A stretch of 64,000 nt of DNA from Ostrea edulis (Eukaryota). Every line of letters starts with the position of its first letter. Within the stretch, counting starts at the first letter, position 1. A program made the position numbers and the translations under genes. Shown here in pieces: positions 5,411-20,230 of this stretch. The notes under the pieces were generated by a model. It saw nothing but the letters and a program-made list of their open reading frames with translations. It had not been told where the DNA came from and ran no database searches. The stretch covers positions 42,966,001 to 43,030,000 of the forward strand of contig NC_079170.1 of the NCBI RefSeq assembly GCF_947568905.1, written 5' to 3'.

Positions 5411-7868
5411 ATAATAACAGTGAACAAATTTTATTTTTTGTAATACTGTTAACAAATGTATTCGTTACAACATTTCATAATCCATGAAAGTTAACGTCGA
5501 ATAACGGAAATTTTAGCACACTCGAAAGACACTGGTTTTCGAACTTGAATTAACAAAGTTAATAACGAGTGTGACCACCATTTGCATTCATGCATGCTTG
5601 ACAACGACGCCTCATTGATGCCACTAAAGTGTTCAGAAATGCTTGGGGGATGTTGTTCCCGATGTTGGTCAAAGCCTGGTCTAAATCAGTCAATGTCACT
5701 GGCTGATTTGGTAAACGGCGTAGACGTCGTTCCATTTCATCCCAGACGTGCTCGATCGGCGATAAATCGGGGGAAACAGCTGGTCAAGGCAAGACATCGA
5801 CATTCTGTTAAACAAAGAAGTCCCTGACTACACGTGCAACGTGTGGCCTTGCGTTGTCTTGCTGCAGAGTGATGCGATTTTGCTGTCTATGTATGAAGGG
5901 TATCACATGGCGCTGAATAATTTTGTCTCGATAGCGTACGCCGGTGAGATTTCCATTGACAATTTGTAGAGGGGTCCTTCCACGTGCTGTTATTCCACCC
6001 CACACCATAACGCTACCTCCACCGAATTGTCTACATTGGACAACACAAGCGTCCTGGTATAGCTCCCCAACGCGACGATACACTCTACAACGGCTATCCA
6101 AATGAAATCTGGATTCATCAGTGAACAGAATATTGGCCCAGTCCTGTATTCTGAATCGCAGATGTCGTCTGCAATACGCTAGTCTAGCGATACGATGACG
6201 TTGAAGCAGTATTGGGCGCACCGCTGGACGTCTTGGTCTGATTTTGTGCTCGCGCAGACGATTACACAGTTCTTGGACTGAATGGTCGAAGTAAAAGCAG
6301 TGAAACTTGCTGTCTGGAAAAGATTTGTCAGGTGCACAAGTCTAATGTGGTTGCCCTGCCGACGCGACTTCACACGAGGACGCCCAGAACGTGGTCGATC
6401 CCGAGTGTTACGAGATTGTTGGAAACGTCTCCATAATGACTGGATGGTGTTCCGATAAACTCCAAAGTGTCTTGCTACGATATTTTGTGACATTCCAGCT
6501 TGAAGCATCCCAAAAGCACGATTACGTTGGTTTTCGCTGAGTCGTGGCATGACAGAAGGGTAAATTTTGTCAAAACTAAAGTGCTTTCCTTAACGAATAG
6601 TGTCCAAACAAACATTTTACATTTCTTACTCCAAACAGTATTGGCCAGTAAAACTCGTGCGTACGAACATTTCAATAAACAACATGTGTTCACTAACCAT
6701 GAAAAAGCCCGTGCATCTTAGTCGGGTACTATCTGATATTGTTACAAAACATCACCTTTATCGATTTTTTTTATATTATATAAATACAAACAATAAATAT
6801 AGAAAAATTATAGTAAATTTTATGATGCACAGTCTTTTTTTCCAGCTAGTGTATGTGAATAAAAGACATAAAGAGGTAGACCTACATGCAGTCATGTATT
6901 TGTTATTTTCACATTCTCCAGAGCAAAACGCACAAAATACAGTTTTTTTCTCTGAATATGTTCAGTTTTCATTACAAAGAACTACTCTTTTAGAGTCAAT
7001 AAATGCAATGCAACTGCAAGTTCCCACATCATTAAAGTTATTGCTGAGTGGTGATGAGATATTTGAATCAAAAGATATCATAAAGATTTTTGAATGTGTT
7101 CAGAAATACATTTTGGAAAGCAAAAGATTTTAAAAATGCATTTAATACATGCGAGTTTGTTATGTATGTCTGTTCTTATCCTGTTGAGTCGGTACTCTCA
7201 ATATAGTTTCTCTCCTGCTCTGTTGTACTTATTCGTTTTTCTTTCACTTTTTTATTTGGTTTAATTTTTTTCTCTTCTGTATATCCCTTAGCTCCCATTA
7301 ACCAACCCCACATTTCTCTTTTGTTACCTTATTATTCATATCAAAAATTCATACTCCTCATATTATCATTATACCTTGAATGATATATCATCCTTTCACT
7401 TCATAGCTATATTGTAATTTCTTATGTACATCATTATGTGGACTTTACCTTGTACCTTAAAGCAGACGGCTTATATAGGCATTGCCTGCTGCCTATAATC
7501 CGTATTACATGTATGTTATTCATAAGATACTCTTTGCAGGAATAAAGTAAATGAAATATCTAGAATATCGCGTGAAAACCGGGGTTTTCTCACTTATTCC
7601 TGTCATTCTTGGTCTTGGAAATTATTCTTGATGAATGTTTGGGAATGACGTGTCATGATTGGTTTGCAAAACTAAAACCGGTTACAGTTACGTCACGTGA
7701 CTTACCAACGTATAACATCCACCAAACGGAAGCAAATCCCTCTATAGTGAAACTAAGAATTCCGGAGAGACAACTTAAAATTGCAATGGTATCGTCATTT
7801 GCACAAAAATGGAACAGCTTCAAAACAAAGACAGATATGCACAGCGACACTACGTCATCTGTAGAATC
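1827..7868 (-). CDS. SLC46-family (PCFT-like) MFS transporter, 3' part: exon-1 remainder 7868-7706, then exons 3606-3523, 3328-3172, 1890-1827
   Basis: All junctions are GT..AG with matching phases (1,1,2). Joined translation: DSTDDVVSLCISVFVLKLFHFCANDDTIAILSCLSGILSFTIEGFASVWWMLYV-A-AICGVISLNALPVIRGILSRLVNETRQ-G-ALFANIYFLETMFRLIGDLVFFNVYADTQGFMKGFVYFVYAAFIAAGGSFM-I-PVLISARRKFRKMQEMTIQV*. The P-x-IR-x2-LS-x2-V-x4-QGALFA pattern is typical of SLC46 C-terminal helices. The last exon is less certain. Confidence 0.85.
3430..3483. repeat. (GATA)n microsatellite, interrupted
   Basis: Direct reading: atagatagat...gatagatagata. Confidence 0.9.
3879..4149 (-). mobile_element. SINE-like element copy 1 (Meta/Deu-like core, (CAAT)n tail, no tRNA head)
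   Basis: Reverse complement begins CCCGTGGGGATC, contains GTCGTAAGAGGCGAC and ends GACGTTAAACAATATACAATCAATCAATCAA. Matches copies at 4995, 21093 and 54961. Confidence 0.8.
4400..4945 (+). mobile_element. Decayed 3' fragment of the Naiad-type PLE
   Basis: Matches 60530-61080 (ggtgtttatgtctctcaactaattcgatatgc ... gcttactcctcctaggcatctgat). Confidence 0.8.
4995..5260 (+). mobile_element. SINE-like element copy 2
   Basis: Starts CCCGTGGGGATA and ends aacaatatacaatgaatcaa. Degenerate TSD: ctattga-aatcc on the left, ctattgatataatcc on the right. Confidence 0.8.
5370..5408. repeat. (TA)n microsatellite inside the Tc1 terminus
   Basis: Direct reading. Confidence 0.95.
5559..6550 (-). pseudogene. 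Tc1 transposase pseudogene
   Basis: ORF 6179..6550 gives the paired-type HTH (MPRLSENQRNRAFGML...RSGRPR). ORF 5808..6221 gives FTDESRF, GGSVMVWGGI and QQDNARPH. The C-terminus SPDLSPIEHVW...GGHTRY* is recovered across stops and a frameshift, with 34 residues between the second D and E. Confidence 0.9.
6960..7557 (+). mobile_element. 5'-truncated non-LTR retrotransposon 3' end (probably CR1-group)
   Basis: ORF end LLLSGDEIFESKDIIKIFECVQKYILESKRF* (stop at 7133) resembles LINE ORF2 C-termini. It is followed by a T-rich UTR, an 8-bp hairpin (tataggca/tgcctata) and an aataaag-type end. Confidence 0.5.
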
Positions 7869-8046
7869 CAATCTGATTAAAATAAGATCTTTGATCCGCT
7901 CCGTTATTGTTATGTCGCTACACAAAGATCTGAAGACATCCCGTGTGGGGTCACGTCGGTGTCAACTTTGGTTTGGCCAATCAAATCGTCACTGCTTACA
8001 TCTTTGGATGTAAAAGTAAATAACGGTAAGCCTCGAAAAGTTCCGA

Positions 8047-11000
8047 ATGTTTAAACTTCCGAATGAAAAAAAAAACATGGCAGCGCCAGTTGGAACACAT
8101 GGGAGTACTCGGACTACCCCACGAAAAGTCTATCCTCTGGGGAACATTTGCCTTATCTGTGGGTTTTCATTTGTGAGCAAATCTGTTGACACTGATGGCA
8201 ACATTAAAATCAACAAATACCTGGACAAAAAACTCCGACTTTCCACGGACCGAATGAAAGTTTTGAAAGATGTGTGCGGAATTTCGGATAGTGTGGTATA
8301 TCCAACTGACACAGGTGTGTGTCAGAAGTGTTTCAGAAGTACCGAAAGAGTATTAAAACTGGAAAAGGAAGCAGCAACTATGAGGGAATCTTTTAAAGCA
8401 TCTGTTCAACTCACACTGCAAAGGTCAGTCACATTTAAATAACCCTGCTCACTTTAGAAAGTCGATAAATACCCCCGTGACCTTTTTTTCCCCAACTTCA
8501 AAATGGCAAGCCAAACTCGTTGATAGAATACAACTCACTAGGTTCATATACGTTTATAACTGCATATTTAATCGATTTTAAATCAATAAGTATCAAAGTC
8601 TTAAGTAAGTGTGTGTGTTGAAGGGGGGAATCACTTTCATGCAGATTTTGTTCAACATATTATTGCCATAAAGATATTTCATTTGTTTCAATATGTGTGG
8701 CTTTAATAATAAAAAAAAATCTTGATCTTATGATTTACCTTCAATCTCATATAGGTTTAATGTTTGTGTGCCTTCCCCCTCTAAAAGATTCATAGAAAAG
8801 AGAGAAATAAGGAGCCCATTTAAAGAAAATACAGATGTGAAGAGGGTTCGACCAGATGATCCACTGTTAGTACCTATCAGAAGGGTAATGCCCGTGAAGC
8901 TGGTACAACTCCAGCCTGCCAGCGCTAATGTAATTGTGAACAAAGCACGGCGCTCTCTTGGTGGGGACTTTTTGAAACAGGTAACGACTGGATATTGCAC
9001 TCGATTTCTATGCAAAGGCAGTGTGCTGGTGTATAATGCAAAGGATTAATACAATTTGACATGCCAATCAGATTAGTATTAAGTTCTTTGGTCGTCTCCA
9101 ATTTATTGTTGATTACGCTTAGTGAGTGTAAGGTATAGGATATATCAACAATTATGATTACAATCATATGTACATGAATGTGGCTGAAACACTTGTATGC
9201 TATATTAATCATAATTCTGTTGCCACCTGCTGCCTTCATTCCTACTACTGCTGAAAAGATTATGAATTACCCCTGCTAGTTGATAAAAGTTTTCAAAAAC
9301 TTTGAACACACATAACTTCATAAATTGCAGACCACAAGTAACTGAATATCTTTGAATACATTTTAGGAGAAAATAACTGATAAACATGAAAATGTTTATA
9401 AAAATGGAGAAGTTGAGGTACAGTGTAGTGAAAAGGTTGAGCTTGACCATAATGTTACAAAATAAGGCTAAGAATAATAATTGTTGTGTTTCTGCTAACA
9501 TCTAAGACAAAATAAGGGTAGGTAGTTAGGTGATTGGGACTTAAGAATCAGTGAATATCTTTGAAAACAAATTAAAATTGTTTTTGCATACTCAAAGAAA
9601 CAATGTGATCAACAACTCCTTGCAGGTTAACATTATGAACACAAGGGACTTAATTTTCACTATTGTTGCAACTTGGTAAGCTGTAATAAATATATTAATT
9701 ACATGATCATCTGTAATAAGTATTAGCTCCAAAACAATGTATATTCAATAATCTCTTAAACAATTTGTTAACTGTACCAGGTAGGAAGTATCATTCATTA
9801 GGTCGATCAGGTTAGCGGAAACACTTTAGTTTTTATTTTAAGCCTAAGCTGGTCAGATATTTTTTGCATCACTGATCTAGCTATTTATGATAATCATGAT
9901 AATGTTAAAGAATCAGTGATTTGATTAAACTGACCAGTTGAACTGTTGATTGTTATTTCTAATACATTATGTTTTGCATGTTACATTGGCACAGGTATGC
10001 CATATTTATTAATTGAATTTGTCTTTAGAAAGATTAATGTTTATCTTCAAGTCAGACTTAAAATCTGAAAATGAGATAATTCAGAAATAGTTACAATTAA
10101 GGCTCAAAAGAATTGATGTTCGGATGATCTGGGGTCTGTATAGTATGTATTTGGTCTAGTGGTTTGTCACAAGCATGCACCATTGGGGCTTGTTAATTTG
10201 AATACTTGTCAGAATTCCTCAATAATTAGGCTAGTAAATCAGATGTCCAAGTGACTTAGGTGGACTATTGTCGTTGTCCGTTAAACATTTTACATTTTAA
10301 ATTTTTTCTTGAAAACCACTAGGCAAATTGATTTGTTGCCATTTTTGGTATGAAGTTTCTTTAGGGTAAGAGGAATGTAAACTGATAAATTTATTATCTT
10401 AGCTTCTCCAAGGCCTCATGGGTTGTGCCAAAACTTATTTCCTCCCACACAGAAAAACCAAATGCATCTATAGGTAAGATGTCCTTGAAGCCATTTACCA
10501 AAATTGTGGAATTCATGGCCCTTTGGTATGAAAGGGGTTCAGTCTCCTAGGTGGGGTCAATATGGCCATATAGTACTGTAAAGATATATTAAATCTTAGA
10601 GAATCTTTTTCTTTAGTCAGAAGTGTGAGAAAAAATAAATGCATGGCTATGATGTCCATGAAGATCGCTACCCATATTGTGAAAATCATTGGCCCTGGGT
10701 TACGAGTTTAAGCCCTTGGGTAGAGCAATGTAGCTCTGAGCCTCTCTAGCGAAAATGTATTAAATCTTTTTCAATGTATGGGCGTTAGTACTCATGTGAC
10801 CGTTAAAGCCTGTGGGTCTCTCGCTTAAATTTTTGTTTTATTTTGCATGACTTTATAGTTTTGTTCTTTATTTTATTTTTTGCTTTGTTGACAGATATCA
10901 ACACCGTTGAATGACCTTCAGTATGTATTCAGTATTTGTCTAAACTTGATTATTGTCCATATTAAACTGATAGAAAACATGTAAATATTGATCATGTTGA

Positions 11001-13077
11001 TAGATTTTATATATATAAGCAAATTATGACATTTTTAGGTCACCTGAATTCATTCAGGTGACCTATTGCTATCTGTTTTTGTCCGTCGTCGTTCGTCGTG
11101 CGTTAACATTTGAACATTTTCAGCTTCTTCTCTGAAACTCCTGAACCAATTTCAACCAATTTTGGCACATAGCATCTGTGGGTGAAGGGGAACAAAAATT
11201 GTGAAATTCGTGGTCCCTGCCCCCCTGGGGCCTGAGGGGTGGGGGCAAAAACCATCAAAATGAGTGTAATTTTAAAAAATCTTCTTCTTTACTCCTGGAC
11301 ATCAAGAAGCCAAACTGTGGGCATAATTATAATGAGCGTTGAGCCCTCTACCAAAATTGTGAAATTCATGGCCCCTGGGGCAGGGGTTCTTGTGTTAGGG
11401 TGGGACTCTATTGGTCATATAGTGAAAATGTAGAAATTCTTTGAAAATCTTCTCTGTCTCTGGGTAATAAGTAGACAAACTAATAGCATGGTAATGATGA
11501 GCAAGGATGCCTCTTTATACCCCCGCAACAAGTTGTGGGGGGGGGGGGGTATACTGGAATCGAGTTGTCCGTCCGTCTGTAGATGCAATGGTTTCCGGGA
11601 TCTAAAGCATTATCCTTTCCACCTACCGTCACCATATCATATATATGGACTACCCATGGGATGAAGATGTTCCCTATCGATTTTGGGGTCAAAAGGTCAA
11701 AGGTCAAGCAAACTGGACATCGAAGTAGCAATAGGGTTTCCGGGCTCTAAAGTGTTATCCTTTCCACCTACAGTCACCATATCATACATATGGACTACCC
11801 ATAGGATGAAGATGTTCAATATCGATTTTTGGGTCAAAAGGTCAAAGGTCAAGCGCACTGGACATTGAAGTAGCAATATGGTTTCCGGGCTCTAAAGCGT
11901 TATCCTTTCCACCTACAGTCACCATATCATATATATGGACTACTAATGGGATGAAGATGATCCCTATCGATTTTGGGGTCAAAAGGTCAAAGGTCAAGCG
12001 CACTGGGTCAGGGGTTCTGGTATTAGGGTGGGGCCCTATTGATCATATAGTGAAAATGCATTTTATTTCTTTGAAAACCTTCTCCTCTGCTGCTGGGTAT
12101 TAAGTAGACAAACTAATAGTATGATAATGATGATCAAGGATGCTTCTTTCAAAACTGAAATTTATGGCCCCTGGATGAGGGGTTCTGGTGCAAAGGCGGG
12201 GCTGACCACATAGCTATTCAATGTTTCTTCCATCCAAAAGTAAAATTCTTATATTTAAACACAAACCTAATTCAAACATTGGAAGGTTGTTACATGATAC
12301 TCAGGTGACCTATAAGGCCCCTGGGCCTCTTGTTCTTGTAAATATTAAGTTCTCAGCTGTTAATATGGTTAATTTCCTGCTACCATTAAAGTTAATTTCT
12401 GTTATATATTTATATTAAAGGTATATGTGCATTATCCAAGTGGAAAAAAGACAGCCCTCATAACTTCTGAACTTCACAAAAGTATTTGCAAAACAATAGT
12501 CGGCAGGAGCAATGTTGAACAGACCATTGTAAATCACCTCTGTTCATCTAACCCAGAAGTTGTTACAAATGGAGTGTCAAGAGTAGTTATGAAAGAAGCA
12601 CAGACTCTTTGTAAGAGGGGGTCAGGATCCATTCTTCAGAGTAAAAACTTTAAAGACTTCTTCCAATTTAAGTGGGAGCAAATGAAAGAGGAACTGCGAA
12701 GGAGGTGCCCTACAATTCTTACATTACTATCAGCAGTAGTTAGTGATAAGGAGCTGTCCAGTGAAAGCAAGGGATTCATCCACATTATGGTATCTGCCGC
12801 TATTGCATTGCATGGAAGAAACCAGGAAATGTCCTTTTTCCAGTACATGACTGCACTTGTGTTAACTCATGGTGGATGCATTCAAAGGGTATGCTTACTT
12901 AGGATATAAACAATGTTATATGTATACTAGATATTCGGGTGGAGATGCAAAACAAATTCCCAGTACTCGATGATTTTTAGCTCACAAAAGTCAGAGGATC
13001 AGTTAAGCTTTTCTGATCGCCTGTTATCTGTTGTCTATCAGTCTGAGAACTTTTTTCATTTTGAGCTATCCAGAACT

Positions 13078-13108
<31 letters not shown>

Positions 13109-16100
13109 CTTTCTTCAATGGTCAGGATAATAGGGGTTCACATCGTTAAGGTTTCAAAATATTCTCAGGAACAGCAATTTGTTCCATTCTGACCTAGTGT
13201 AAAACATTATTGTACTGCTGTAAAAGTCATGCTACTCAGGTGAAATGATACATGTGTATATTGTTTTACAGGACATTGAACGACTATCAAACATTGGATT
13301 GAGTGTCCATCCCAAGACCATCCACAGGAAGTTAGAATCCTGGAAAGAATTGATAGATGTGAAAGTCAAAGAATTACGTGATTCATGGGCTGATAGTGGG
13401 AATGTGAAATACCAATTAGTGGGGGACAATTGGGACAAGAATATATTACCATCATACAGGACATCAGACCGAGGAACCCTGTCACTCCATCTCTTCAATG
13501 TTATTGCGGTTCAAGATAGAGTCCCACCTTTACCGGAGCTTCCTAAAGAGGAAAGAGAGATGACACAAGCTTGTGAATTTCTACCATCCATTGCTGATCA
13601 AAAACAACTGATGAAAGAATTGACATTCTTATTTGCAACCTCCATCATTGAGCATAATCCTCAGCTGCATAGAGTGTTTAACACTATTTATCCAAAGCAT
13701 TTGGATCATCCTTACAGTCATTACTCTGGACTTAAGACATTCCAAGTAAATATTTACATTCTACAGTACTGAAATTGTAAATTCATGAATATATTTCACC
13801 ATTAATTTAATTATATGCATGTTTTTAAAGAATTCCACTGATTGACTTATTGAATAATATGAATACCCATGTAACCATTTTTATACATTTGTGTTTCAGT
13901 ATCCACTTGGATTATATGACTGTAATGAAAACAAGACCCAAGAACTCATTGCTCTTTTGAAGAAGCTATCCAATGACTTCATACCACAAAAGAATGGGGA
14001 AATTGTTGAGCCTGTGTTTTTTGGGGGTATGTTTTTAATCACTTACTTACATTATTGTAATGGATAATGATTAAATATTTTTACAAATTCAAACAATTTT
14101 ATTTTGTGACAAAAGGGTATTGAACCTTATCTAATACACATTAAATGCTGTTTTAACCATTAATGCATGTATTATAGGAGACAGACTAACTGACGAAAGA
14201 GTCCAATCAGCTCAAAATGCAATGAAGAATGCTGCAACACCAAAAGAGAAATTGGAAGGGTTTATTTCCAAAATAGAAGATTTTCATAGATTGATGAATT
14301 TCTTAGAGGTACTTGTTAAAATTCAATTTTTATTATTTATTGCAATTGGTTGTCGTTTGTCGTCGTTTGTCATGCATTAACAATTGAACATTTTAAAGTT
14401 CTTCCTGATAACTACTGTTCCAATTCTTTTTAAATTTGGTATGAAGCATCTTTAGGACAATGGGGACATAAATTGTAAATTTAAGGACTCCTGGGGCCTT
14501 AGGGGCGGGGCAAAAGTTGACTAATTTTCAAAAATCTTCTCTTTACACTTGCATATTTTAAGAAATGAAACTAAATGCATAGTGATATAAAGCAGGAAGG
14601 CCTCTACCAAAATTGTAATTTTCTGGATCCCTGGGGTAGAGGTTCTGAGTCCAGGGTGGGGTCAAACTTGGTATGTATAGTGTATATGTGCAAAACTTAT
14701 AAATGATATCCGCTTTAATGCTATTGGTACTAAATTGAAACTAAATGGATATTTAGAATGAGCAAGTAGTCCTTCACCAAAATTGTAAATTTCATGATCC
14801 TAGGGAGTAAGAGTTTCGTTTCAAGGTGATGCCAAAATTATTATAATGATTTGAAGGACTTCTTTCAGTTTACTGATACCGTATAAAGTTTAAATGCATA
14901 TTTAGGAATAGCAGAAAAGGATGTACAAAAAATGGTGAATTTTGCAACCCCAGGGTTTTGACTCTAGGATGGGTCCAAATTAGTCATATCGCTTAATGTT
15001 AATAAATATATAGATTATGTAAAGACTTTCATAAGTGTACTCGCTTTTTAGACATTGAAGTTTTAAGAACACATGTTGTTTTAAACTGTTGCTGAATGAT
15101 AGAATTTAGCTTAGATATTCAGAACAAGAAATGTCTTTTCTAGATTTCATTGCCCACGAGATGAAATAATTTCAGGATGCCGAGTAAATTGCATATTAAA
15201 AAAAAAATTAGACAACATATTTTGAAATCAGGCACTTATATCTTTCTTAACCTCTTACAAGTTTGTTTCTCTATGGATGTGGGTATTGGTATGTGTACAC
15301 CTTAATCAAGATTCAAAATGATTAATCATCATTGTATACATAATGTACTTTTTGTATATATTGCTGACATATACCTCCCATTTTATTAACTTGATTCATT
15401 AGATACTTAATCCATCTTATATGTGTTATAGGCCATAGCCAAGATGACTTTCAGCACAGATAGTGGACAAGATGCTGGGACTCTCTATTACTACAGGAAT
15501 CTGCTGAATCATAGAGGTGTGAAGGGTGAAGTTAAGAACTCATATCGCCCATATAAGCTCCTGTGCTACACCGTGTTTGATGCTATTTGTCAGCTCTTTC
15601 TCCTTCATCATTTTGACATGACGGATGTTGATTCTAACCTCCCATTTCCAGAGGAATTCCAGGAATTGTCAGACAATGCTAAAGTAGAATGGTTAAACTT
15701 GGTGTGCAGTGAAATCTTGCAGACATGGTTCTTTGAAAATGAGAATGACATTTGTAAAGAATTAAGGGATGTGTTAGATGATCCACAGCACTCAGAGAAC
15801 TACTGGCTTTCGAGAATGCTTGAAAATGAACGTTTGAAGTGTCACTTTTGTGAAGCGACCTATGCATGTGTTGGCTCACTCCAATCCCATGAACAAAAGA
15901 AGCATGATGTTCAAATCCCTCCAAAACAGTCAAAATTGAAAGAGAAGAAAAGAGATCAGCTCCAGGATTACTTGGTAATGGTATTCAAGCTTGTCATTCT
16001 TCACAAAAACTTGGACACAGCTGTAGATATGGGAGATGGAGAGCGGGCAGTCAGGTCAGCTAAGTATGAACTGCCTCTATATAACAAGACGAACAAAGTC

Positions 16101-16610
16101 AAATACCTGATAGGATCTGTTCAGCTCACAGCCTTAACATCAAATAGTGGTGTACTCCCAGAAGATCAAAGACAACGGCTAGTTGCAAACAGATTTGTCA
16201 ATATTCAAGGTGGACAAAATAACAACATTGCCCTTGATGAATACCTTGAAATGGTGAACCGTGACAGCAAAGTAGCTTGTACTGGCAATCAGACGAAGGA
16301 TAGCATCATTCTCCATTCTAAGGAATACCCACATTTAGTCAATTTTGTAAAACATCTCGATGAAATTGCAAATGTTCGTCAAAAGAAGGGCTTTCATCAT
16401 CTACCTTCGTACCAGAGTGATGTGAAAAAAGTTTTACAGGATTTAATGCAAAATGATATTCTTGTGTATGACCCAAATAGGAAACTTCACTGCAAAAAAT
16501 TTGTCATTGATAGAAATCCATTCGACAACGCATTTACCAAACTTCCAATTATGATTCATAGGCACAAACCAACTTTGCCATTTTGTCGACTCCGGAATTT
16601 GCACATTTGA
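8047..16610 (+). CDS. Academ-type DDE transposase, 7 exons, ~993 aa, no stops or frameshifts
   Basis: Exons 8047-8423, 8755-8980, 12421-12888, 13272-13745, 13900-14026, 14178-14308, 15432-16610, all GT..AG with phases 2,0,0,0,1,0, total 2982 nt. Motifs LVGDNWD, VFFGGDRLTDER, IEDFHRLMNF, GTLYYYRN and NIALDEYLEMVNRDSK. N-terminal CxxC..CxxC. Extra exons in the 3.4-kb intron 2 cannot be excluded. Confidence 0.88.
10246..10825 (+). mobile_element. Decayed Helentron-type non-autonomous element (HINE-like) in transposase intron 2
   Basis: Shares blocks (ttgtccgttaaacattttac, accaaaattgtgaaattcatggcccct, 3' actcatgtgacc plus hairpin) with the element at 11033-12335. Confidence 0.55.
11033..12335 (+). 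mobile_element. HINE-like element in transposase intron 2
   Basis: 5' TTTTTAGGTCACCTGA..TCAGGTGACC palindrome, short (gtc) repeats, 3' subterminal TCAGGTGACC plus hairpin AGGCCCCTGGGCCT, T-rich ends. This is the structure of bivalve Helentron-associated elements. Confidence 0.75.
11514..12006 (+). repeat. Nested HINE fragment (TTATACCCCCGCAAC family) carrying ~3 x 145-bp satellite-like units
   Basis: tctaaag recurs at 11601, 11746 and 11891. Units contain ggggtcaaaaggtcaaaggtcaag. Confidence 0.8.
12974..13245 (+). mobile_element. Short HINE-like element in transposase intron 3
   Basis: Starts tttttagctcac...aagcttttctgatcgcc and ends actcaggtga. Confidence 0.6.
14340..15190 (+). mobile_element. 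Decayed HINE-like element in transposase intron 6
   Basis: gtcgtttgtcgtcg repeats plus repeated accaaaattgtaaatttc...ccctgggg blocks shared with 11033-12335. Confidence 0.55.
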
Positions 16611-17400
16611 TTTTGCCAGCTTTTCTACGCAGAAACTACAAGGGCGTGCATGTCATAAATATCTGCATAATATCGAAGTTTTAAGAATTTCAAGCAAGTT
16701 TATGTCTTGATACTTGGCCTTATATACATTGTATATGTTACTCTCATTGTGTAGTATTGTGCCAAAACAAGTCAAAAAATAGGACCCTGGTTTGTAAGGT
16801 CTTACATTGAAATTGATATTGAATTTGATGACTGACTTGATCTTGAGGCAGATGTTCAAAAACCATTTTCTTTCACCATCCATTTGACAGTAATAAACAT
16901 GTACAATTCTTGCATGTCTTGAGCTTGAATAAAACAAATACATACAGTGACACTAGTTATTCACTTAAATTTATTGGCATGTCGATCGAAGAAACATTTT
17001 AAAGATTAAGGGCGAGATTAAAAGTTCAATGTCTGACACATACACCCCCACCCCAATCAAATACCTAGTACTTTTCTTCAAGACATTACAACCCTTTAAA
17101 AATAATGATTTAACTCAATTCTTAAGCATAGGTACAATGAATTAAAAAGCAATTAACCTACTTAGTACAACTCTAATGACAGACTGAACATGTTCAATCT
17201 TTCTCATAGATCCTGAAAACAGAGCCTCCCCTTTGAATATAGCTTTTCATCCGACATGACCTTTTATATCTCGCCCCTTTCAAGCATGTAATAGAACAAA
17301 TTTTACCTTGACCACTGGAAAGGAAAAGCAATACTATTAATTTTGATGGGTTTTTTATTCCCCCACCCCCATCAGTTTTTTACGAGAAGTCATTGAAAAG

Positions 17401-19085
17401 TCAGGCATAACATGAATTTAAGTCGAGTGTGCCATCTAAGAAGTCATTATCTGAACTTCCAAAAGAATCTTCAGCCTCATTACTGTCTGAGTTGGAAATG
17501 ACACTCTGTTCAAAAAGTCTCTCCAAGGAAAGATATTCACAATTGCCACAACTACAAAGTTTGTGGCACACATCGCAGCATGTATGCTTTTTAACGTCCT
17601 GTTCAAGTTCACTTAAATTGGATTCACTCAAAAATTGTTTCATAATGTTTATTCGTCTACAAGTAGGTGAACGTAGGATATCTTTCATGGATTTGTCAAG
17701 TCTACGCAGATGATAAGCGTTAAACAAAATAAGGGCAATTGATGACTCCCCATCTCTTCCAATGCGCCCTATTTCTTGCACTAAGTCTACAATATTTTCG
17801 GGTATTCCGAACAGAATTACACTGTTGCAATGGGACACATCAATACCCATCCCTAATGCAGTAGTACAAATCACTAATCTGATTTTTGAAGTGTTATTCT
17901 GGTCATTTAAGCAATTGACAATTTCAGTTTTTTTGCCAATGGGTGTTTCTGAGTGAAACATTTCAATAAGAGGACTTGTGCCATCCAACTCCTTAATGAG
18001 ATAAGTGTAAAGTTTAGAAACATCATTAATGCTAGAACAGTACAATAATGTTTTGGGAAAGTCACTCTGCAAATGTTGAATTCCATCCACAAGCCAGGAC
18101 ATTGCCATTTCAAGATCACTGGATACTTTGGATATTGAGTATTTTATGTTAGCTTTATTTGGAGACATAACAATTTCTACTGTGTTTGGTCCAAAAGACA
18201 ACTGTTTTGAAACTCTTTTCTGAATTTTTACTGTAGATGTTGCACTTAGTGCGATAACACTGGCTTTTGGAAATAAAGATCTTAATTCTCCCACATGCGA
18301 AAACCACTTCCTAAATGCTTGTTTCTTTAAACCCATTCGGTCTTCACCCCTACATAAAAAAATAAACAATAACCAGGTCAGTGGTTGTGATAAAAACATG
18401 AGGAATAGTTTGTTGGAATAATGATATATTTACAATAAGTAAATGAAAAATTTACCATGTTGCAATCGTATGAAATTCATCAATGACTATGTTTTGTACA
18501 TTCAATTTCTTCATATCTTCTCTCCAAACTGCATTACTTATCAAAGATTCTGGAGATGCATAGATGACATCTATTTCCCCACTGAGTATCTGCCTGTCAC
18601 TTTCTTCACTTAAACCTGTAAAAATATTTTTTAAAGAATATCCTATTTATTATAATACTATATACCAAAGTTTGCTCAGATTATGTCGACACCCCGTGCA
18701 AATATTTGTCGATCCGACACTCAGCACATCAGTGAACAAAACCGGTATCATGGATTACATAAAGCCCTTTACCTTTGTACGCTGCCGATATACCCGGCAC
18801 AGCTGATATTTTCTTCACCTGGTCCTGCATTAGTGCAACTAAAGGACAGCAGACTAATATCACAGCACTAAATCCGGGGTTCATCTCGCGCATAAGTGGA
18901 ATGTAGACTTGAAAAGGCAGCGATTTGCCAAAACCAGTTGGCAAAATGGCCATACAGTCTTTGCCTTCAATCATGGCATCCAATATGCTCCGTTGTTCTT
19001 TCTTTAAAGCACTAACACCGAAACGTGGTAAAATTTTCTCTAAAGCTGCATCGATTACTTTAATGTCGGCCATTTTTCCTTTCAT
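17401..19085 (-). CDS. RecQ-like superfamily 2 helicase of AcademH, 3 exons, 473 aa
   Basis: Exons 19085-18773, 18615-18456, 18349-17401 with phases 1,2, total 1422 nt. Motif I LPTGFGKS, Ia CPLVALMQDQ, II IDEFH, III ALSAT, V TTALGMGID, VI QEIGRIGRDG, and a C-terminal Zn module CRR...CCDVC. Confidence 0.93.
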
Positions 19086-19260
19086 ACCGAATGCATTTTG
19101 TAAGAATAGCCCGCGATTGGTTGAAGCAGAAGCATTTCATTGGTCGACCCCAGGTTACCAAAGTTGACACCGACGTGACCCCACACGGAATGTCTTCAGA
19201 TCTTTGTGTAGCGACATAACAATAACGGAGCGGATCAAAGATCTTATTTTAATCAGATTG

Positions 19261-20230
19261 CTGTAGAATCATACCATCCGATTTTCTCCGATGTAAAACA
19301 GAATGGCTGACCCAGAAAATACAGTACATCCACACTACTTCTCGTCGTAAAAGGCGAAATCACGAAAGTTAAAGCGAGCACACACATCACAAATTGCCAA
19401 ACTTGGCCATCTCGGAGATTCGACGAACTAGTATAGAAAGCGAAAAATCTGCCGACCTTTTGACACAAAGTGTCATCGTTTGTTTTTCGTTTGGAGTTTC
19501 CTAAGGTTTCTGGTAAATACAAGCCCGTAAATAGATTAAAAAAGCACAACACTAACGACACTAAGCACGGCGGAACAGAGCCTAAATACTTTAGTGTATA
19601 TCCGGTAGAGATGTGTGCGATTGTCGACCCTATACCATCATAAAGATGTAGTAAGGCGAATGTGAAGGACCGTGACTTGTCGTATTTTGTGATATCTGCA
19701 ACTACACCAGACAAAGCCATAGAAAGAGTACATCGGGTACCTGTTATTCCAGCCAGTAAAAAACCCACGAAAAAATACTTGATATCGAGGTTGTACTGTA
19801 CGACAACAAGTGTGGCGAAATATTGTAGGAAGGTTCCTAGAAGAGGTAGGATGATGAAAAATCTCCTACCATAGTAGTCCGACATGATCCCTCCAAAGAC
19901 AACGACGAAGAGTCCCGGTATATACTCAGCATATCCGTAGTATGCGTCCCACTGCGCAGATTCGCGTTGAGCTTCCGCACTGTGAAAGGAGCAATTTTTA
20001 TTCGGAATTGATTGAGTGATGCTCGAGTTTGTCAGGTCCGCCTGAATTTGTTCACTGATATGTCGGAAAGTGTACTCCATTATAACGGAATATCCAGACT
20101 GCGTGGACACATTGTGTAAAATCAGAATAACACATATGGAGTAGTGCACAGACTTTTTAGATTTTGTTCGTGTTCTGATCGCATTATCGGTGTCAGGAAG
20201 AAGGTGGGTGTCCTCATTACCAGAATCCAT
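19261..20230 (-). CDS. SLC46-family MFS transporter, 5' part of coding exon 1 (truncated at 325 aa by AcademH)
   Basis: ORF 19253..20230 is hydrophobic, with MFS motif A-like GIMSDYYGRRFFIILPLLG and SLC46-like ADIT-x5-RSFTFALL. It stops a few bases inside the right TIR and resumes in frame at 7868. Confidence 0.88.

What the first reader, a model, noticed from the sequence alone, without database searches (positions are those of the whole stretch)
7869..19260. Apparently intact, autonomous AcademH element with both genes open
Hand-splicing gives a 993-aa DDE transposase (7 exons) and a 473-aa RecQ-like helicase (3 exons), with no stops and all canonical junctions. Intact TIRs and TSD make this a candidate active copy. 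The role of the helicase in Academ transposition is, to my knowledge, untested, so an intact copy is a usable experimental system.
Basis: partly seen in the sequence, partly recalled or inferred. Interest (0 to 1): 0.75.

Follow-up and report, generated by a model that had tools for sequence, protein, structure and literature searches.

The report
Young intact helicase-carrying oyster transposon
This is an undamaged copy of a very young, multi-copy jumping gene of the European flat oyster that carries its own RecQ-like helicase and has landed inside a transporter gene's coding exon. The kind (AcademH type) is already described, so it is a good experimental handle and not a new class.

Summary
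Window 7869-19260 is an 11,392-bp element with 104-nt TIRs (1 mismatch) and a 10-bp TSD.

**Genes.** My independent models give a 7-exon transposase and a 3-exon, 473-aa helicase, with all junctions GT..AG and no stops.
- The helicase model is identical to an Ostrea edulis RefSeq protein.
- The transposase model aligns without gaps to a 983-aa RefSeq model that starts at the second ATG, so the length is 983 or 993 aa.

**Signs of recent activity.**
- Four copies have both genes open. The closest is 99.86% identical, and each has its own 9-10 bp TSD.
- The window copy has only 4 private substitutions, all in introns.
- The terminal 30-mer occurs 1,038 times in the genome, mostly as 78-218 bp MITEs.
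- The copy splits a coding exon of an MFS transporter gene.

**Classification.**
- The transposase folds like P-element, hAT and RAG1 DDE enzymes.
- The convergent transposase-helicase pair is conserved in scallops, a clam and a mussel.
- Architecture and TSD length match AcademH. No reference Academ sequence was available, so sequence-level membership is untested.
- Current mobility is not shown.

The scan had already noted this stretch and two sister copies in the same genome. Verdict: new member of a known kind, moderate interest.

The parts
7859..7868 (.). Left copy of the 10-bp target site duplication (CTGTAGAATC)
   Evidence: Read directly; confirmed by script.
7869..7972 (+). Left terminal inverted repeat, 104 nt, beginning 5'-CAATCTGATT. 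It contains the word AAGATCT three times (positions 16, 17 on the opposite strand, and 57).
   Evidence: The terminal 30-mer occurs 509+529 times in the genome with up to 2 mismatches, against 0 for the reversed control. MITEs keep only 33-59 nt of each tip.
7977..7981 (+). CCAAT box just inside the left TIR, upstream of the transposase ATG. A promoter role is inferred only.
   Evidence: Sequence read. No expression data.
8047..8423 (+). Transposase exon 1. The first ATG is at 8047. The second ATG, at 8077, is the RefSeq start and has the better Kozak context. The exon encodes a CxxC...CxxC domain (C35, C38, C92, C95).
   Evidence: The exon is open and 97-100% identical in about 9 copies and has more than 100 distant relatives in the genome. 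A resemblance to the zf-AD domain is an Atlas lead only.
8755..8980 (+). Transposase exon 2
   Evidence: Junctions. Gapless agreement with RefSeq P0230.
10972..12333 (.). Nested copy of an unrelated high-copy repeat inside intron 2. It includes a 145-bp x 2.9 tandem array at 11590-12006.
   Evidence: It is absent from the 92-94% copies and present in the young copies that retain this part of intron 2. Tandem array. 3,957 first-look candidates genome-wide.
12421..12888 (+). Transposase exon 3
   Evidence: The exon 3 to exon 4 junction is seen in spliced RNA contigs of a related element.
13272..13745 (+). Transposase exon 4, with the near-invariant GDNWD motif (13422-13436; D409 is the candidate first catalytic Asp).
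   Evidence: In the model, D65 lies on the first strand of the RNase H-like core.
13900..14026 (+). Transposase exon 5. It ends in FFGG; the motif FFGGDRLTDER is split by intron 5.
14178..14308 (+). Transposase exon 6. It holds D559 (GGDRLT), the candidate second catalytic Asp, and the invariant SKIEDFHRLMN motif (14267-14299).
15432..16610 (+). Transposase exon 7 with its stop codon. It holds a C2H2 zinc finger (15840-15905) and the DEYxEMxNRD motif (16236-16265; E871 or E874 is the candidate catalytic Glu). It matches the C-terminal part of Pfam DUF6589.
16611..17400 (.). Spacer of 790 bp between the two convergent genes. AATAAA/ATTAAA signals lie on the + strand at 16892, 16928, 17017 and 17141, and on the - strand at 17359 and 16975.
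   Evidence: These are motif matches only.
17401..18349 (-). Helicase exon 3 with its stop codon. It holds motif III (SAT), Helicase_C, motif VI QEIGRIGR (17778-17755) and a C-terminal Cys cluster (17661-17554).
18456..18615 (-). Helicase exon 2, with the DEFH box (motif II, 18481-18470).
18773..19085 (-). Helicase exon 1. The ATG is at 19085 and the Walker A motif GFGKS is at 18935-18921.
19116..19143 (-). Two CCAAT boxes (19143-19139 and 19120-19116 on the minus strand) just inside the right TIR, upstream of the helicase ATG. A promoter role is inferred only.
19157..19260 (-). Right terminal inverted repeat, 104 nt
19261..19270 (.). Right copy of the 10-bp target site duplication
19261..20230 (-). 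Upstream half of the host MFS-transporter coding exon that the element interrupts.
   Evidence: Pfam MFS_1, E = 7.7e-11. The 69%-identical paralogue carries this half directly next to the other half in one 400-aa open frame.
7656..7868 (-). Downstream half of the same host exon. It is in frame with the upstream half once the element and one TSD copy are removed (...WYDST|DDVVS...).
   Evidence: ORF list, frame arithmetic, and paralogue contiguity.

Best explanation
The stretch is a structurally intact, autonomous copy of a young DNA transposon family of the European flat oyster (Ostrea edulis). It has the AcademH architecture. There are two convergent genes, and each starts about 175-210 bp inside an identical 104-nt TIR. 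One encodes a 983/993-aa transposase with an RNase H-like DDE core. That core appears to be interrupted by a large helical, zinc-finger-bearing insertion, as in P-element, hAT and RAG1 enzymes. The other encodes a 473-aa RecQ-like SF2 helicase. Shown here: the anatomy, the coding integrity, the spread of the family by true transposition with a 9-10 bp staggered target cut, and the mobilisation of tiny derivatives that keep only about 35-60 nt of each tip. Inferred: the transposase binds the terminal ~35 nt, cuts the element out and pastes it in. The helicase is a conserved accessory factor that helps either at the transpososome (end or target unwinding, linked in the literature to the long TSD) or in repair of the donor gap. 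This copy inserted recently into a coding exon of an MFS transporter gene, and probably inactivated that allele.
For: - Ends: TIRs and TSD confirmed.
- Gene models: derived independently, open, all junctions GT..AG. The helicase equals RefSeq P0091. The transposase aligns without gaps to RefSeq P0230. Junctions 3>4 to 6>7 are seen in spliced RNA contigs of a related element from another species. Bivalve homologues are collinear across the junctions.
- Selection: exons are less diverged than non-coding sequence; Ka/Ks is 0.27-0.47 for the transposase and 0.53-0.68 for the helicase against the 92-94% tier.
- Youth: C9 is 99.86%, C3 about 99.7% and C2 99.1% identical. All four copies have both genes open. 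The window copy has 4 private substitutions, all non-coding.
- Transposition: every copy, deletion derivative and MITE has its own 9-10 bp TSD. There are 1,038 terminal 30-mers against 0 in the control.
- Shared nested repeat: it lies in intron 2 of the young copies only, so they descend from one master that kept moving after acquiring it.
- Helicase: only RecQ-family chains head the PDB hits. Motifs I, II, III and VI are present.
- Transposase fold: pLDDT 82.9, pTM 0.83. Hermes fills the top 12 Foldseek rows. By VIA-align, P element has Z 9.7, Hermes 8.1, ISCth4 8.1 and RAG1 7.8, and the top 34 rows are all DDE enzymes.
- The pair is ancestral: convergent DUF6589 and DEAD/Helicase_C genes lie together in Argopecten, Mizuhopecten, Mercenaria and Mytilus.
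- AcademH criterion: 9-10 bp TSDs (PMC10045372).
- Host exon split.
Against: - No reference Academ or AcademH sequence could be compared. Kojima 2020 and Yuan & Wessler 2011 are not held.
- Pfam names the transposase only DUF6589.
- Word tests against the stored part of a curated bivalve 'Academ-1' library gave 0 exact hits and 1 motif hit. That part holds only distant species.
- There is no transcript of this copy, no population data, and no empty allele in the assembly.
- The catalytic Glu is ambiguous: E591, or E871/E874.
- The helicase's role is wholly inferred.
- The MITE count is inflated: 6 of 20 sampled share one flank, so they were copied as passengers of another repeat.
Confidence: 0.82

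Rival explanations
1. The copy is intact in sequence but the family is no longer mobile. The burst has ended, the copies are silenced or lack a host factor, and near-identity only reflects how recent the burst was.
For: There is no direct evidence of present activity. The window copy carries 4 private substitutions, C9 carries 6 and C3 carries 9, so the insertions are not brand new. The only RNA contigs found come from another species, matching this genome at 83%. The assembly holds no empty allele.
Against: Four copies keep both genes open with all splice sites intact. The coding sequence of the window copy has no private change. Both halves of the interrupted host exon are still open. Many MITEs have perfect 30-nt termini.
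Confidence: 0.35
2. It is not an Academ element. The DUF6589 transposase would belong to another DDE superfamily, such as a MuDR-like lineage (which also makes 9-10 bp TSDs and has long TIRs) or an unnamed one, that acquired a RecQ-like helicase independently.
For: Membership in Academ was never tested at sequence level. The D-N-W-D motif words are nearly absent from the stored curated 'Academ-1' records. The fold's best neighbours are P, hAT and the IS256-family ISCth4, all within the C/DxxH group of superfamilies (PMC9587614). An ExxH/DxH motif lies 32-35 residues after the second Asp.
Against: There is no Pfam MULE, Transposase_mut, hAT or P-element domain even at E <= 1. In what I could read, the combination of a separate helicase gene with 9-10 bp TSDs is described only for AcademH. 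Academ is reported as bivalve-expanded (PMC10294476) and most abundant in rust fungi (PMC5751038). Both reports match where DUF6589 proteins are seen. The stored library part held only distant species, and only 3 of 8 codon sets were tried.
Confidence: 0.12
3. The helicase is a host RecQ-like gene that happens to lie inside the element or was captured by it, as its RefSeq name suggests, and is not part of the transposition machinery.
For: RefSeq names it 'ATP-dependent DNA helicase RecQ-like'. No experiment links it to transposition.
Against: The helicase lies between the TIRs in every long copy, including the 92-94% tier. The same convergent pair occurs in four other bivalve genera at about 45-55% protein identity. 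At least ten further divergent families in this genome pair a transposase exon with a helicase exon 1-3 kb away. Ka/Ks is below 1.
Confidence: 0.03
4. The near-identical copies arose by segmental duplication and not by transposition.
For: Some old copies are duplicated together with their flanks: C7c and C7d share a flank, and L023 and L024 are identical. Six of 20 MITEs share a flank.
Against: The window, C9, C3, C2, C5a, C1 and C4 copies have different flanks, each with its own perfect 9- or 10-bp TSD that abuts the TIR exactly. They lie on six chromosomes.
Confidence: 0.02

Closest known systems
AcademH lineage of the Academ superfamily (Kojima 2020, Mob DNA 11:15; read here only through PMC10045372 and PMC10799480)
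   Same: It is a TIR DNA transposon with a DDD/E-type transposase and a separate SF2 (DEAD/Helicase_C, RecQ-like) helicase gene. It makes 9 or 10-bp TSDs and occurs in animals.
   Different: Nothing contradictory was found. Homology of this transposase to reference AcademH consensuses was not tested. This family has 6 and 2 introns, 104-nt TIRs, a nested foreign repeat in intron 2, and a swarm of 78-218 bp MITEs. I could not check whether this O. edulis family is already in Repbase.
KolobokH, and Kolobok-1_CCri (PMC9587614)
   Same: They are TIR transposons with a DDD/E transposase and a RecQ helicase. In Kolobok-1_CCri the helicase is on the complementary strand, as it is here.
   Different: Kolobok makes TTAA-specific 4-bp TSDs and has 5'-RR..YY-3' termini. 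This element makes non-TTAA 9-10 bp TSDs and ends 5'-CA..TG-3'. KolobokH fuses the helicase downstream of the transposase and is reported only from fungi.
MuDR/MULE superfamily
   Same: It makes 9-10 bp TSDs and has long (about 100 nt or more) TIRs. The fold of its bacterial IS256-family relative ISCth4 matches at Z 8.1.
   Different: There is no Pfam MULE, Transposase_mut or SWIM match at E <= 1. To my knowledge no MULE is known to carry a helicase. P-element transposase and Hermes match the fold equally well or better.
P-element transposase, Hermes (hAT) and RAG1/Transib (solved structures)
   Same: The predicted fold is an RNase H-like DDE core that spans a large helical insertion domain (Z 9.7, 8.1, 7.8 and 7.1).
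   Different: Sequence identity is only 7-13% and there is no Pfam relationship. TSD length differs: 8 bp for P and hAT and 5 bp for Transib (from general knowledge), against 9-10 bp here. There is no GTP-binding domain signature.
Cellular RecQ helicases (E. coli RecQ, BLM, WRN, RECQ1)
   Same: The helicase core has motifs I, II (DExH), III and VI. The best PDB sequence matches are all RecQ family. A Cys cluster lies where the RecQ zinc subdomain is found.
   Different: The protein is only 473 aa. It has no RQC winged-helix or HRDC domain, and RecQ_Zn_bind is not detected by Pfam. It is encoded inside a transposon.

Membership tests
AcademH (Academ superfamily) | A helicase gene in addition to the transposase, within the element | tested here: met
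   A 473-aa DEAD + Helicase_C protein lies between the TIRs. The pair is conserved in four other bivalve genera.
AcademH (Academ superfamily) | 9- or 10-bp target site duplications (AcademX: 3-4 bp); criterion from PMC10045372 | tested here: met
   The window copy has a 10-bp TSD. Eight other long or derivative copies have 9 or 10 bp. Of 20 MITEs, 13 have 9 bp, 3 have 10 bp, 2 have 10 bp with one mismatch, 1 is ambiguous and 1 has none.
AcademH (Academ superfamily) | Terminal inverted repeats | tested here: met
   104 nt, 99% complementary.
AcademH (Academ superfamily) | Transposase homologous to reference Academ DDD/E transposases (Repbase; Yuan & Wessler 2011 alignment) | not testable with these tools
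   No reference sequence is held. Pfam gives only DUF6589. The partial attempt through the curated bivalve 'Academ-1' library was inconclusive: 0 exact words and 1 motif word, and the stored part lacks oysters and scallops.
Kolobok / KolobokH | TTAA-specific 4-bp TSD and 5'-RR..YY-3' termini (PMC9587614) | tested here: not met
   TSDs are 9-10 bp with varied sequence. Termini are CA..TG.
MuDR/MULE | MULE / Transposase_mut catalytic domain | tested here: not met
   No such Pfam hit for P0230 at E <= 1.
MuDR/MULE | 9-10 bp TSD and long TIRs | tested here: met
   This feature is shared with AcademH and so does not discriminate.
DDE (RNase H-like) cut-and-paste transposases | RNase H-like catalytic fold | tested here: met
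   Model pLDDT 82.9. The top 34 VIA-align rows are all DDE transposases or integrases: P element Z 9.7 with 323 residues aligned, and PFV integrase core Z 7.3 at rmsd 3.4 A. Hermes fills the top 12 Foldseek rows. The Z values are middling by the tool's own caution. The consistency of the list is what carries the argument.
DDE (RNase H-like) cut-and-paste transposases | Identified catalytic D, D, E triad | tested here: inconclusive
   D409 (GDNWD) and D559 (GGDRLT) are near-invariant and placed as expected. The Glu is either E591 (EDFH) or E871/E874 (DEYxEMxNRD, with Arg at +7). Integrase cores align over model residues 60-561, which favours the distal one. I had no access to coordinates.
RecQ helicase family | SF2 core with motifs I, II (DExH), III and VI, and best similarity to RecQ proteins | tested here: met
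   GFGKS at 51, DEFH at 150, SAT at 193 and QEIGRIGR at 349. The PDB hits are headed only by RecQ, BLM, WRN and RECQ1/4/5.
RecQ helicase family | RecQ C-terminal region (zinc subdomain, RQC winged helix) and HRDC | tested here: not met
   A Cys cluster at 388-428 sits where the zinc subdomain is found. PF16124, PF09382 and PF00570 are not detected at E <= 1, and the protein ends at residue 473.

The most novel reading that the evidence does not exclude
The family is transposing now in flat oysters, and the window insertion is a segregating null allele of an MFS transporter gene. The element-encoded RecQ-like helicase is required for transposition, for example by opening target DNA for the unusually long 9-10 bp stagger or by steering repair of the excision gap. 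That would make this the first Academ element in which the accessory enzyme's role can be tested directly.
Probability: 0.25. Interest if true: 0.6.

Novelty: new member of a known kind. Interest (0 to 1): 0.4.

Why it matters
In the library I could search, no Academ element has been shown to move experimentally, and the role of the accessory helicase is only speculated on (PMC10045372). This family offers what such a test needs. There are four copies with both genes open, gene models confirmed by RefSeq, and natural mini-substrates: MITEs of 78-218 bp that delimit the cis-requirements to about 35-60 nt per end. The target signature is clear. It also shows that oyster RefSeq lists transposon genes as host genes ('ATP-dependent DNA helicase RecQ-like'), which matters for gene-family counts. 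Finally, it documents a recent gene-disrupting insertion in a species of aquaculture and conservation interest.

Tried and rejected
- Kojima 2020 (by DOI and as PMC7165386) and Yuan & Wessler 2011 (PMC3093488) are not held. AcademH criteria therefore come second-hand, from PMC10045372, PMC10799480 and PMC9587614.
- Literature searches for DUF6589 and PF20231 gave nothing useful.
- Supplement file 12 of PMC10294476 is a curated bivalve TE library. I tried to link this family to its 'Academ-1' records.
  - 20-mers from the Mizuhopecten and Mercenaria homologues: 0 hits.
  - 14-16-mers conserved between oysters: 0 hits.
  - Three of the eight codon sets for D-N-W-D, on both strands: 1 hit.
  - The stored part has no oyster or scallop records, so the test is inconclusive.
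- No k-mer of 13 nt or more is shared between the window exons and several other species' loci.
- The look-up of encoding contigs found no record for P0091, because records of the window's own genome may be left out. RefSeq's neighbouring gene calls could therefore not be listed.
- The bacterial-type promoter and terminator scan does not apply to an animal genome and is disregarded.
- The first exon-3 query was in the wrong phase and was corrected.
- Segmental duplication and host-gene capture were considered and rejected (see rivals).
- Complex prediction for transposase with helicase was not run, because I do not claim that the two proteins bind.
- The large representative-protein search was not used, because the word search and family scans were sufficient.
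- The joined (spliced) protein models were never typed or sent to any search or fold tool. Searches used single exons by reference, or the database proteins P0230 and P0091. Joins were made only inside scripts from window.fa, to count stops and to test identity to those proteins.


Full report
**Observation**

Window 7869-19260 is bounded by inverted repeats of 104 nt that are 99% complementary. The bases outside them are the same 10 nt, CTGTAGAATC, at 7859-7868 and 19261-19270.

For each pair of neighbouring open pieces I listed all frame-compatible GT..AG pairs and scored them.
- The best chain for the plus-strand gene is 8047-8423, 8755-8980, 12421-12888, 13272-13745, 13900-14026, 14178-14308 and 15432-16607. 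This is 2,979 nt, or 993 codons.
- The best chain for the minus-strand gene is 19085-18773, 18615-18456 and 18349-17404. This is 1,419 nt, or 473 codons.
- Neither has an internal stop, and all splice dinucleotides are GT/AG.

**Independent support for the models**

The genome is Ostrea edulis. Hits named Ostrea edulis lie on contigs whose lengths equal those of G000:C2, C3, C9 and C1.
- The helicase model is identical to RefSeq P0091, 'ATP-dependent DNA helicase RecQ-like [Ostrea edulis]', 473 aa.
- The transposase model aligns without a gap to RefSeq P0230 (983 aa). There are four substitutions, which are the private variants of the C2 copy, and the C2 copy spliced in the same way equals P0230 exactly.
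- P0230 starts at the second ATG (8077). That ATG has the better Kozak context (AAAAACATGG against TTCCGAATGT). In C2 a 1-nt change in an A-run puts the first ATG out of frame. The protein is therefore 983 or 993 aa, and 983 is more likely.
- Two RNA-derived Logan contigs (L057, L058) are 82-92% identical to the window but only 83% identical to any copy in this genome, so they come from another species. They join exons 3-4-5-6-7 at my junctions.
- Longer bivalve homologues are collinear across the same junctions.
- Against the older, broken copies, exons are less diverged than non-coding DNA. Ka/Ks is 0.27-0.47 for the transposase and 0.53-0.68 for the helicase. This is what a mix of selection on active lineages and neutral decay of dead copies would give.

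The joined models were never sent to a search or fold tool. Exons were searched by reference, and P0230 and P0091 stood in for the whole proteins.

**The family in the genome**

- A TIR search found long copies on six chromosomes.
- C9:48981127-48992523 is 99.86% identical over the whole length, C3 about 99.7% and C2 99.1%. There are also deletion derivatives of 6.9 kb (C5) and 2.7 kb (C1), and an older tier at 92-94% that is full of stops.
- Four copies (window, C9, C3, C2) have both genes open.
- The window copy has 4 private substitutions in 11,392 bp, all intronic, so its coding sequence is the majority state at every site.
- Every copy has different flanks and its own perfect 9- or 10-bp TSD.
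- The terminal 30-mer occurs 509 + 529 times with up to 2 mismatches, against 0 for the reversed control. Most occurrences are inverted pairs 78-218 bp apart. These are MITEs made of 33-59 nt of each tip.
- Of 20 sampled MITEs, 13 have 9-bp TSDs, 3 have 10-bp TSDs, 2 have 10-bp TSDs with one mismatch, 1 lies in poly-C and 1 has none.
- Six of the 20 share one flank, so part of the MITE count comes from passive copying inside another repeat.
- A 1.36-kb nested copy of an unrelated high-copy repeat lies in intron 2 of the young copies that retain that part of the intron. It is missing from the older tier. The young copies therefore descend from one master that kept transposing after that insertion.

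**The insertion site**

On the minus strand, a 325-codon ORF with an MFS_1 match runs into the right TIR. A 71-codon ORF leaves the left TIR in the frame that results when the element and one TSD copy are removed. In a 69%-identical paralogue 4.3 kb before the window, and in further paralogues, the two halves abut in one ~400-aa open frame. The element therefore splits a coding exon. Both halves are still open, which fits a recent event.

**What the proteins are**

- The helicase has DEAD and Helicase_C domains. It carries motifs GFGKS, DEFH, SAT and QEIGRIGR, and a C-terminal Cys cluster.
- Its PDB sequence matches are headed only by RecQ, BLM, WRN, RECQ1, RECQ4 and RECQ5. It lacks RQC and HRDC domains.
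- The transposase matches only Pfam DUF6589, over residues 445-911 of P0230.
- An alignment of 33 homologues shows near-invariant GDNWD, FFGGDRLTDER, SKIEDFHRLMN and DEYxEMxNRD motifs.
- A model of P0230:335-940 is confident (pLDDT 82.9, pTM 0.83).
- Foldseek ranks Hermes chains 1-12. VIA-align gives P-element transposase Z 9.7, Hermes 8.1, ISCth4 8.1, RAG1 7.8, foamy-virus integrase core 7.3 and Transib 7.1. The first 34 rows are all DDE enzymes.
- The small integrase cores align across model residues ~60-561. The RNase H fold therefore seems to be interrupted by a large helical insertion that holds a C2H2 finger, and the catalytic Glu is more likely E871 or E874 than E591. This remains open.
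- The N-terminal CxxC...CxxC domain has more than 100 distant relatives in the genome. It resembles zf-AD only as an Atlas lead.

**Classification**

In Argopecten, Mizuhopecten, Mercenaria and Mytilus, a DUF6589 gene is followed by a convergent DEAD/Helicase_C gene. Three are annotated at 465-471 aa and one is a 117-aa fragment. O. edulis itself holds at least ten further divergent families with the same pairing. The helicase is therefore an ancestral part of the element.

The literature I could read states that AcademH makes 9 or 10-bp TSDs and AcademX 3 or 4 bp (PMC10045372). It also states that Academ is expanded in bivalves (PMC10294476). Kolobok, which has RecQ-carrying lineages, is defined by TTAA TSDs and RR..YY termini (PMC9587614), and these features are not met here. 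MuDR shares the TSD length and long TIRs, but no MULE domain is detected.

I could not compare the transposase with reference Academ sequences. An attempt through a curated library held as a supplement was inconclusive. I therefore file the element as AcademH-type with about 0.8 confidence in the label.

**Mechanism**

- Shown: intact ends and genes, spread by transposition with a 9-10 bp stagger, and mobilisation of derivatives that keep only the terminal ~35-60 nt.
- Inferred: the two genes are driven inward from CCAAT-bearing regions just inside the identical TIRs. The DDE enzyme binds the tips, where AAGATCT words recur, and cuts and pastes the element. The RecQ-like helicase assists either at the transpososome or in gap repair. 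The many internally deleted derivatives are the usual products of interrupted gap repair.
- Not shown: present activity.

**Verdict**

The kind is already described, bivalve Academ expansion is known, and the scan had already noted this stretch and two sister copies. This is a new member of a known kind. It has moderate interest as a ready experimental system.

Noticed in passing
window 7656-7868 and 19261-20230 (minus strand); paralogue at G000:C7:42961547-42962317: The element interrupts a ~390-400-codon coding exon of an MFS transporter gene. A 69%-identical tandem paralogue lies 4.3 kb before the window and is uninterrupted. Both halves of the hit gene are still open.
   Followed up: partly
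window 10972-12333 (tandem array 11590-12006): Intron 2 of the transposase gene holds a nested copy of an unrelated, very abundant repeat (3,957 first-look candidates; many copies at 95-96%) with a 145-bp x 2.9 internal tandem array. It marks the young subfamily.
   Followed up: partly
genome-wide, e.g. G000:C1:39865434-39865587, C1:76560807-76560960, C2:7734858-7735011: A 154-bp MITE class, and some 113-160 bp ones, recurs with the identical flank gtgctttaca/tgctttacaa. This MITE sits inside another repeat that was itself amplified, which inflates the terminal 30-mer count.
   Followed up: partly
RefSeq proteins P0091 and P0230 (copies on G000:C3, C9, C2, C7): The two transposon genes are annotated in the O. 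edulis RefSeq as ordinary host genes: 'ATP-dependent DNA helicase RecQ-like' and 'uncharacterized protein LOC125676812'. Many 'RecQ-like', 'RecS' and 'WRN-like' entries of bivalves are probably transposon helicases too.
   Followed up: partly
G000:C7:23.07-24.05 Mb (e.g. 23076650, 23129367, 23326761, 23454039, 23613854, 23915972, 24049131): Old, broken copies of the family (80-93%) are clustered within about 1 Mb of chromosome 7. Two of them (C7c, C7d) share the same flank, so this region was built by segmental duplication and not by repeated insertion.
   Followed up: no
G000, e.g. C9:31046513-31049793, C3:47703709-47706989, C2:13860408-13863831, C1:73300122-73303272: At least ten further divergent families (40-60% protein identity) pair an open transposase exon with a helicase exon 1-3 kb away. 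Several are present in multiple identical copies, so the flat oyster carries a diverse set of apparently live helicase-bearing transposons.
   Followed up: no
window 8047-8423 (exon 1): The N-terminal CxxC...53 aa...CxxC domain has more than 100 distant relatives (30-50% identity) across the genome, many within open frames of 190-250 aa. By language-model features it resembles the arthropod zf-AD domain (score 0.90). This is a lead only.
   Followed up: no
L023 and L024 (G000:C9:63018809-63018939 and 63030539-63030669): Two identical MITE copies 11.7 kb apart have identical flanks and no TSD. They are part of a local tandem duplication, and this region also holds repeated copies of a divergent transposase+helicase family (C9:63.13-63.43 Mb).
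   Followed up: no
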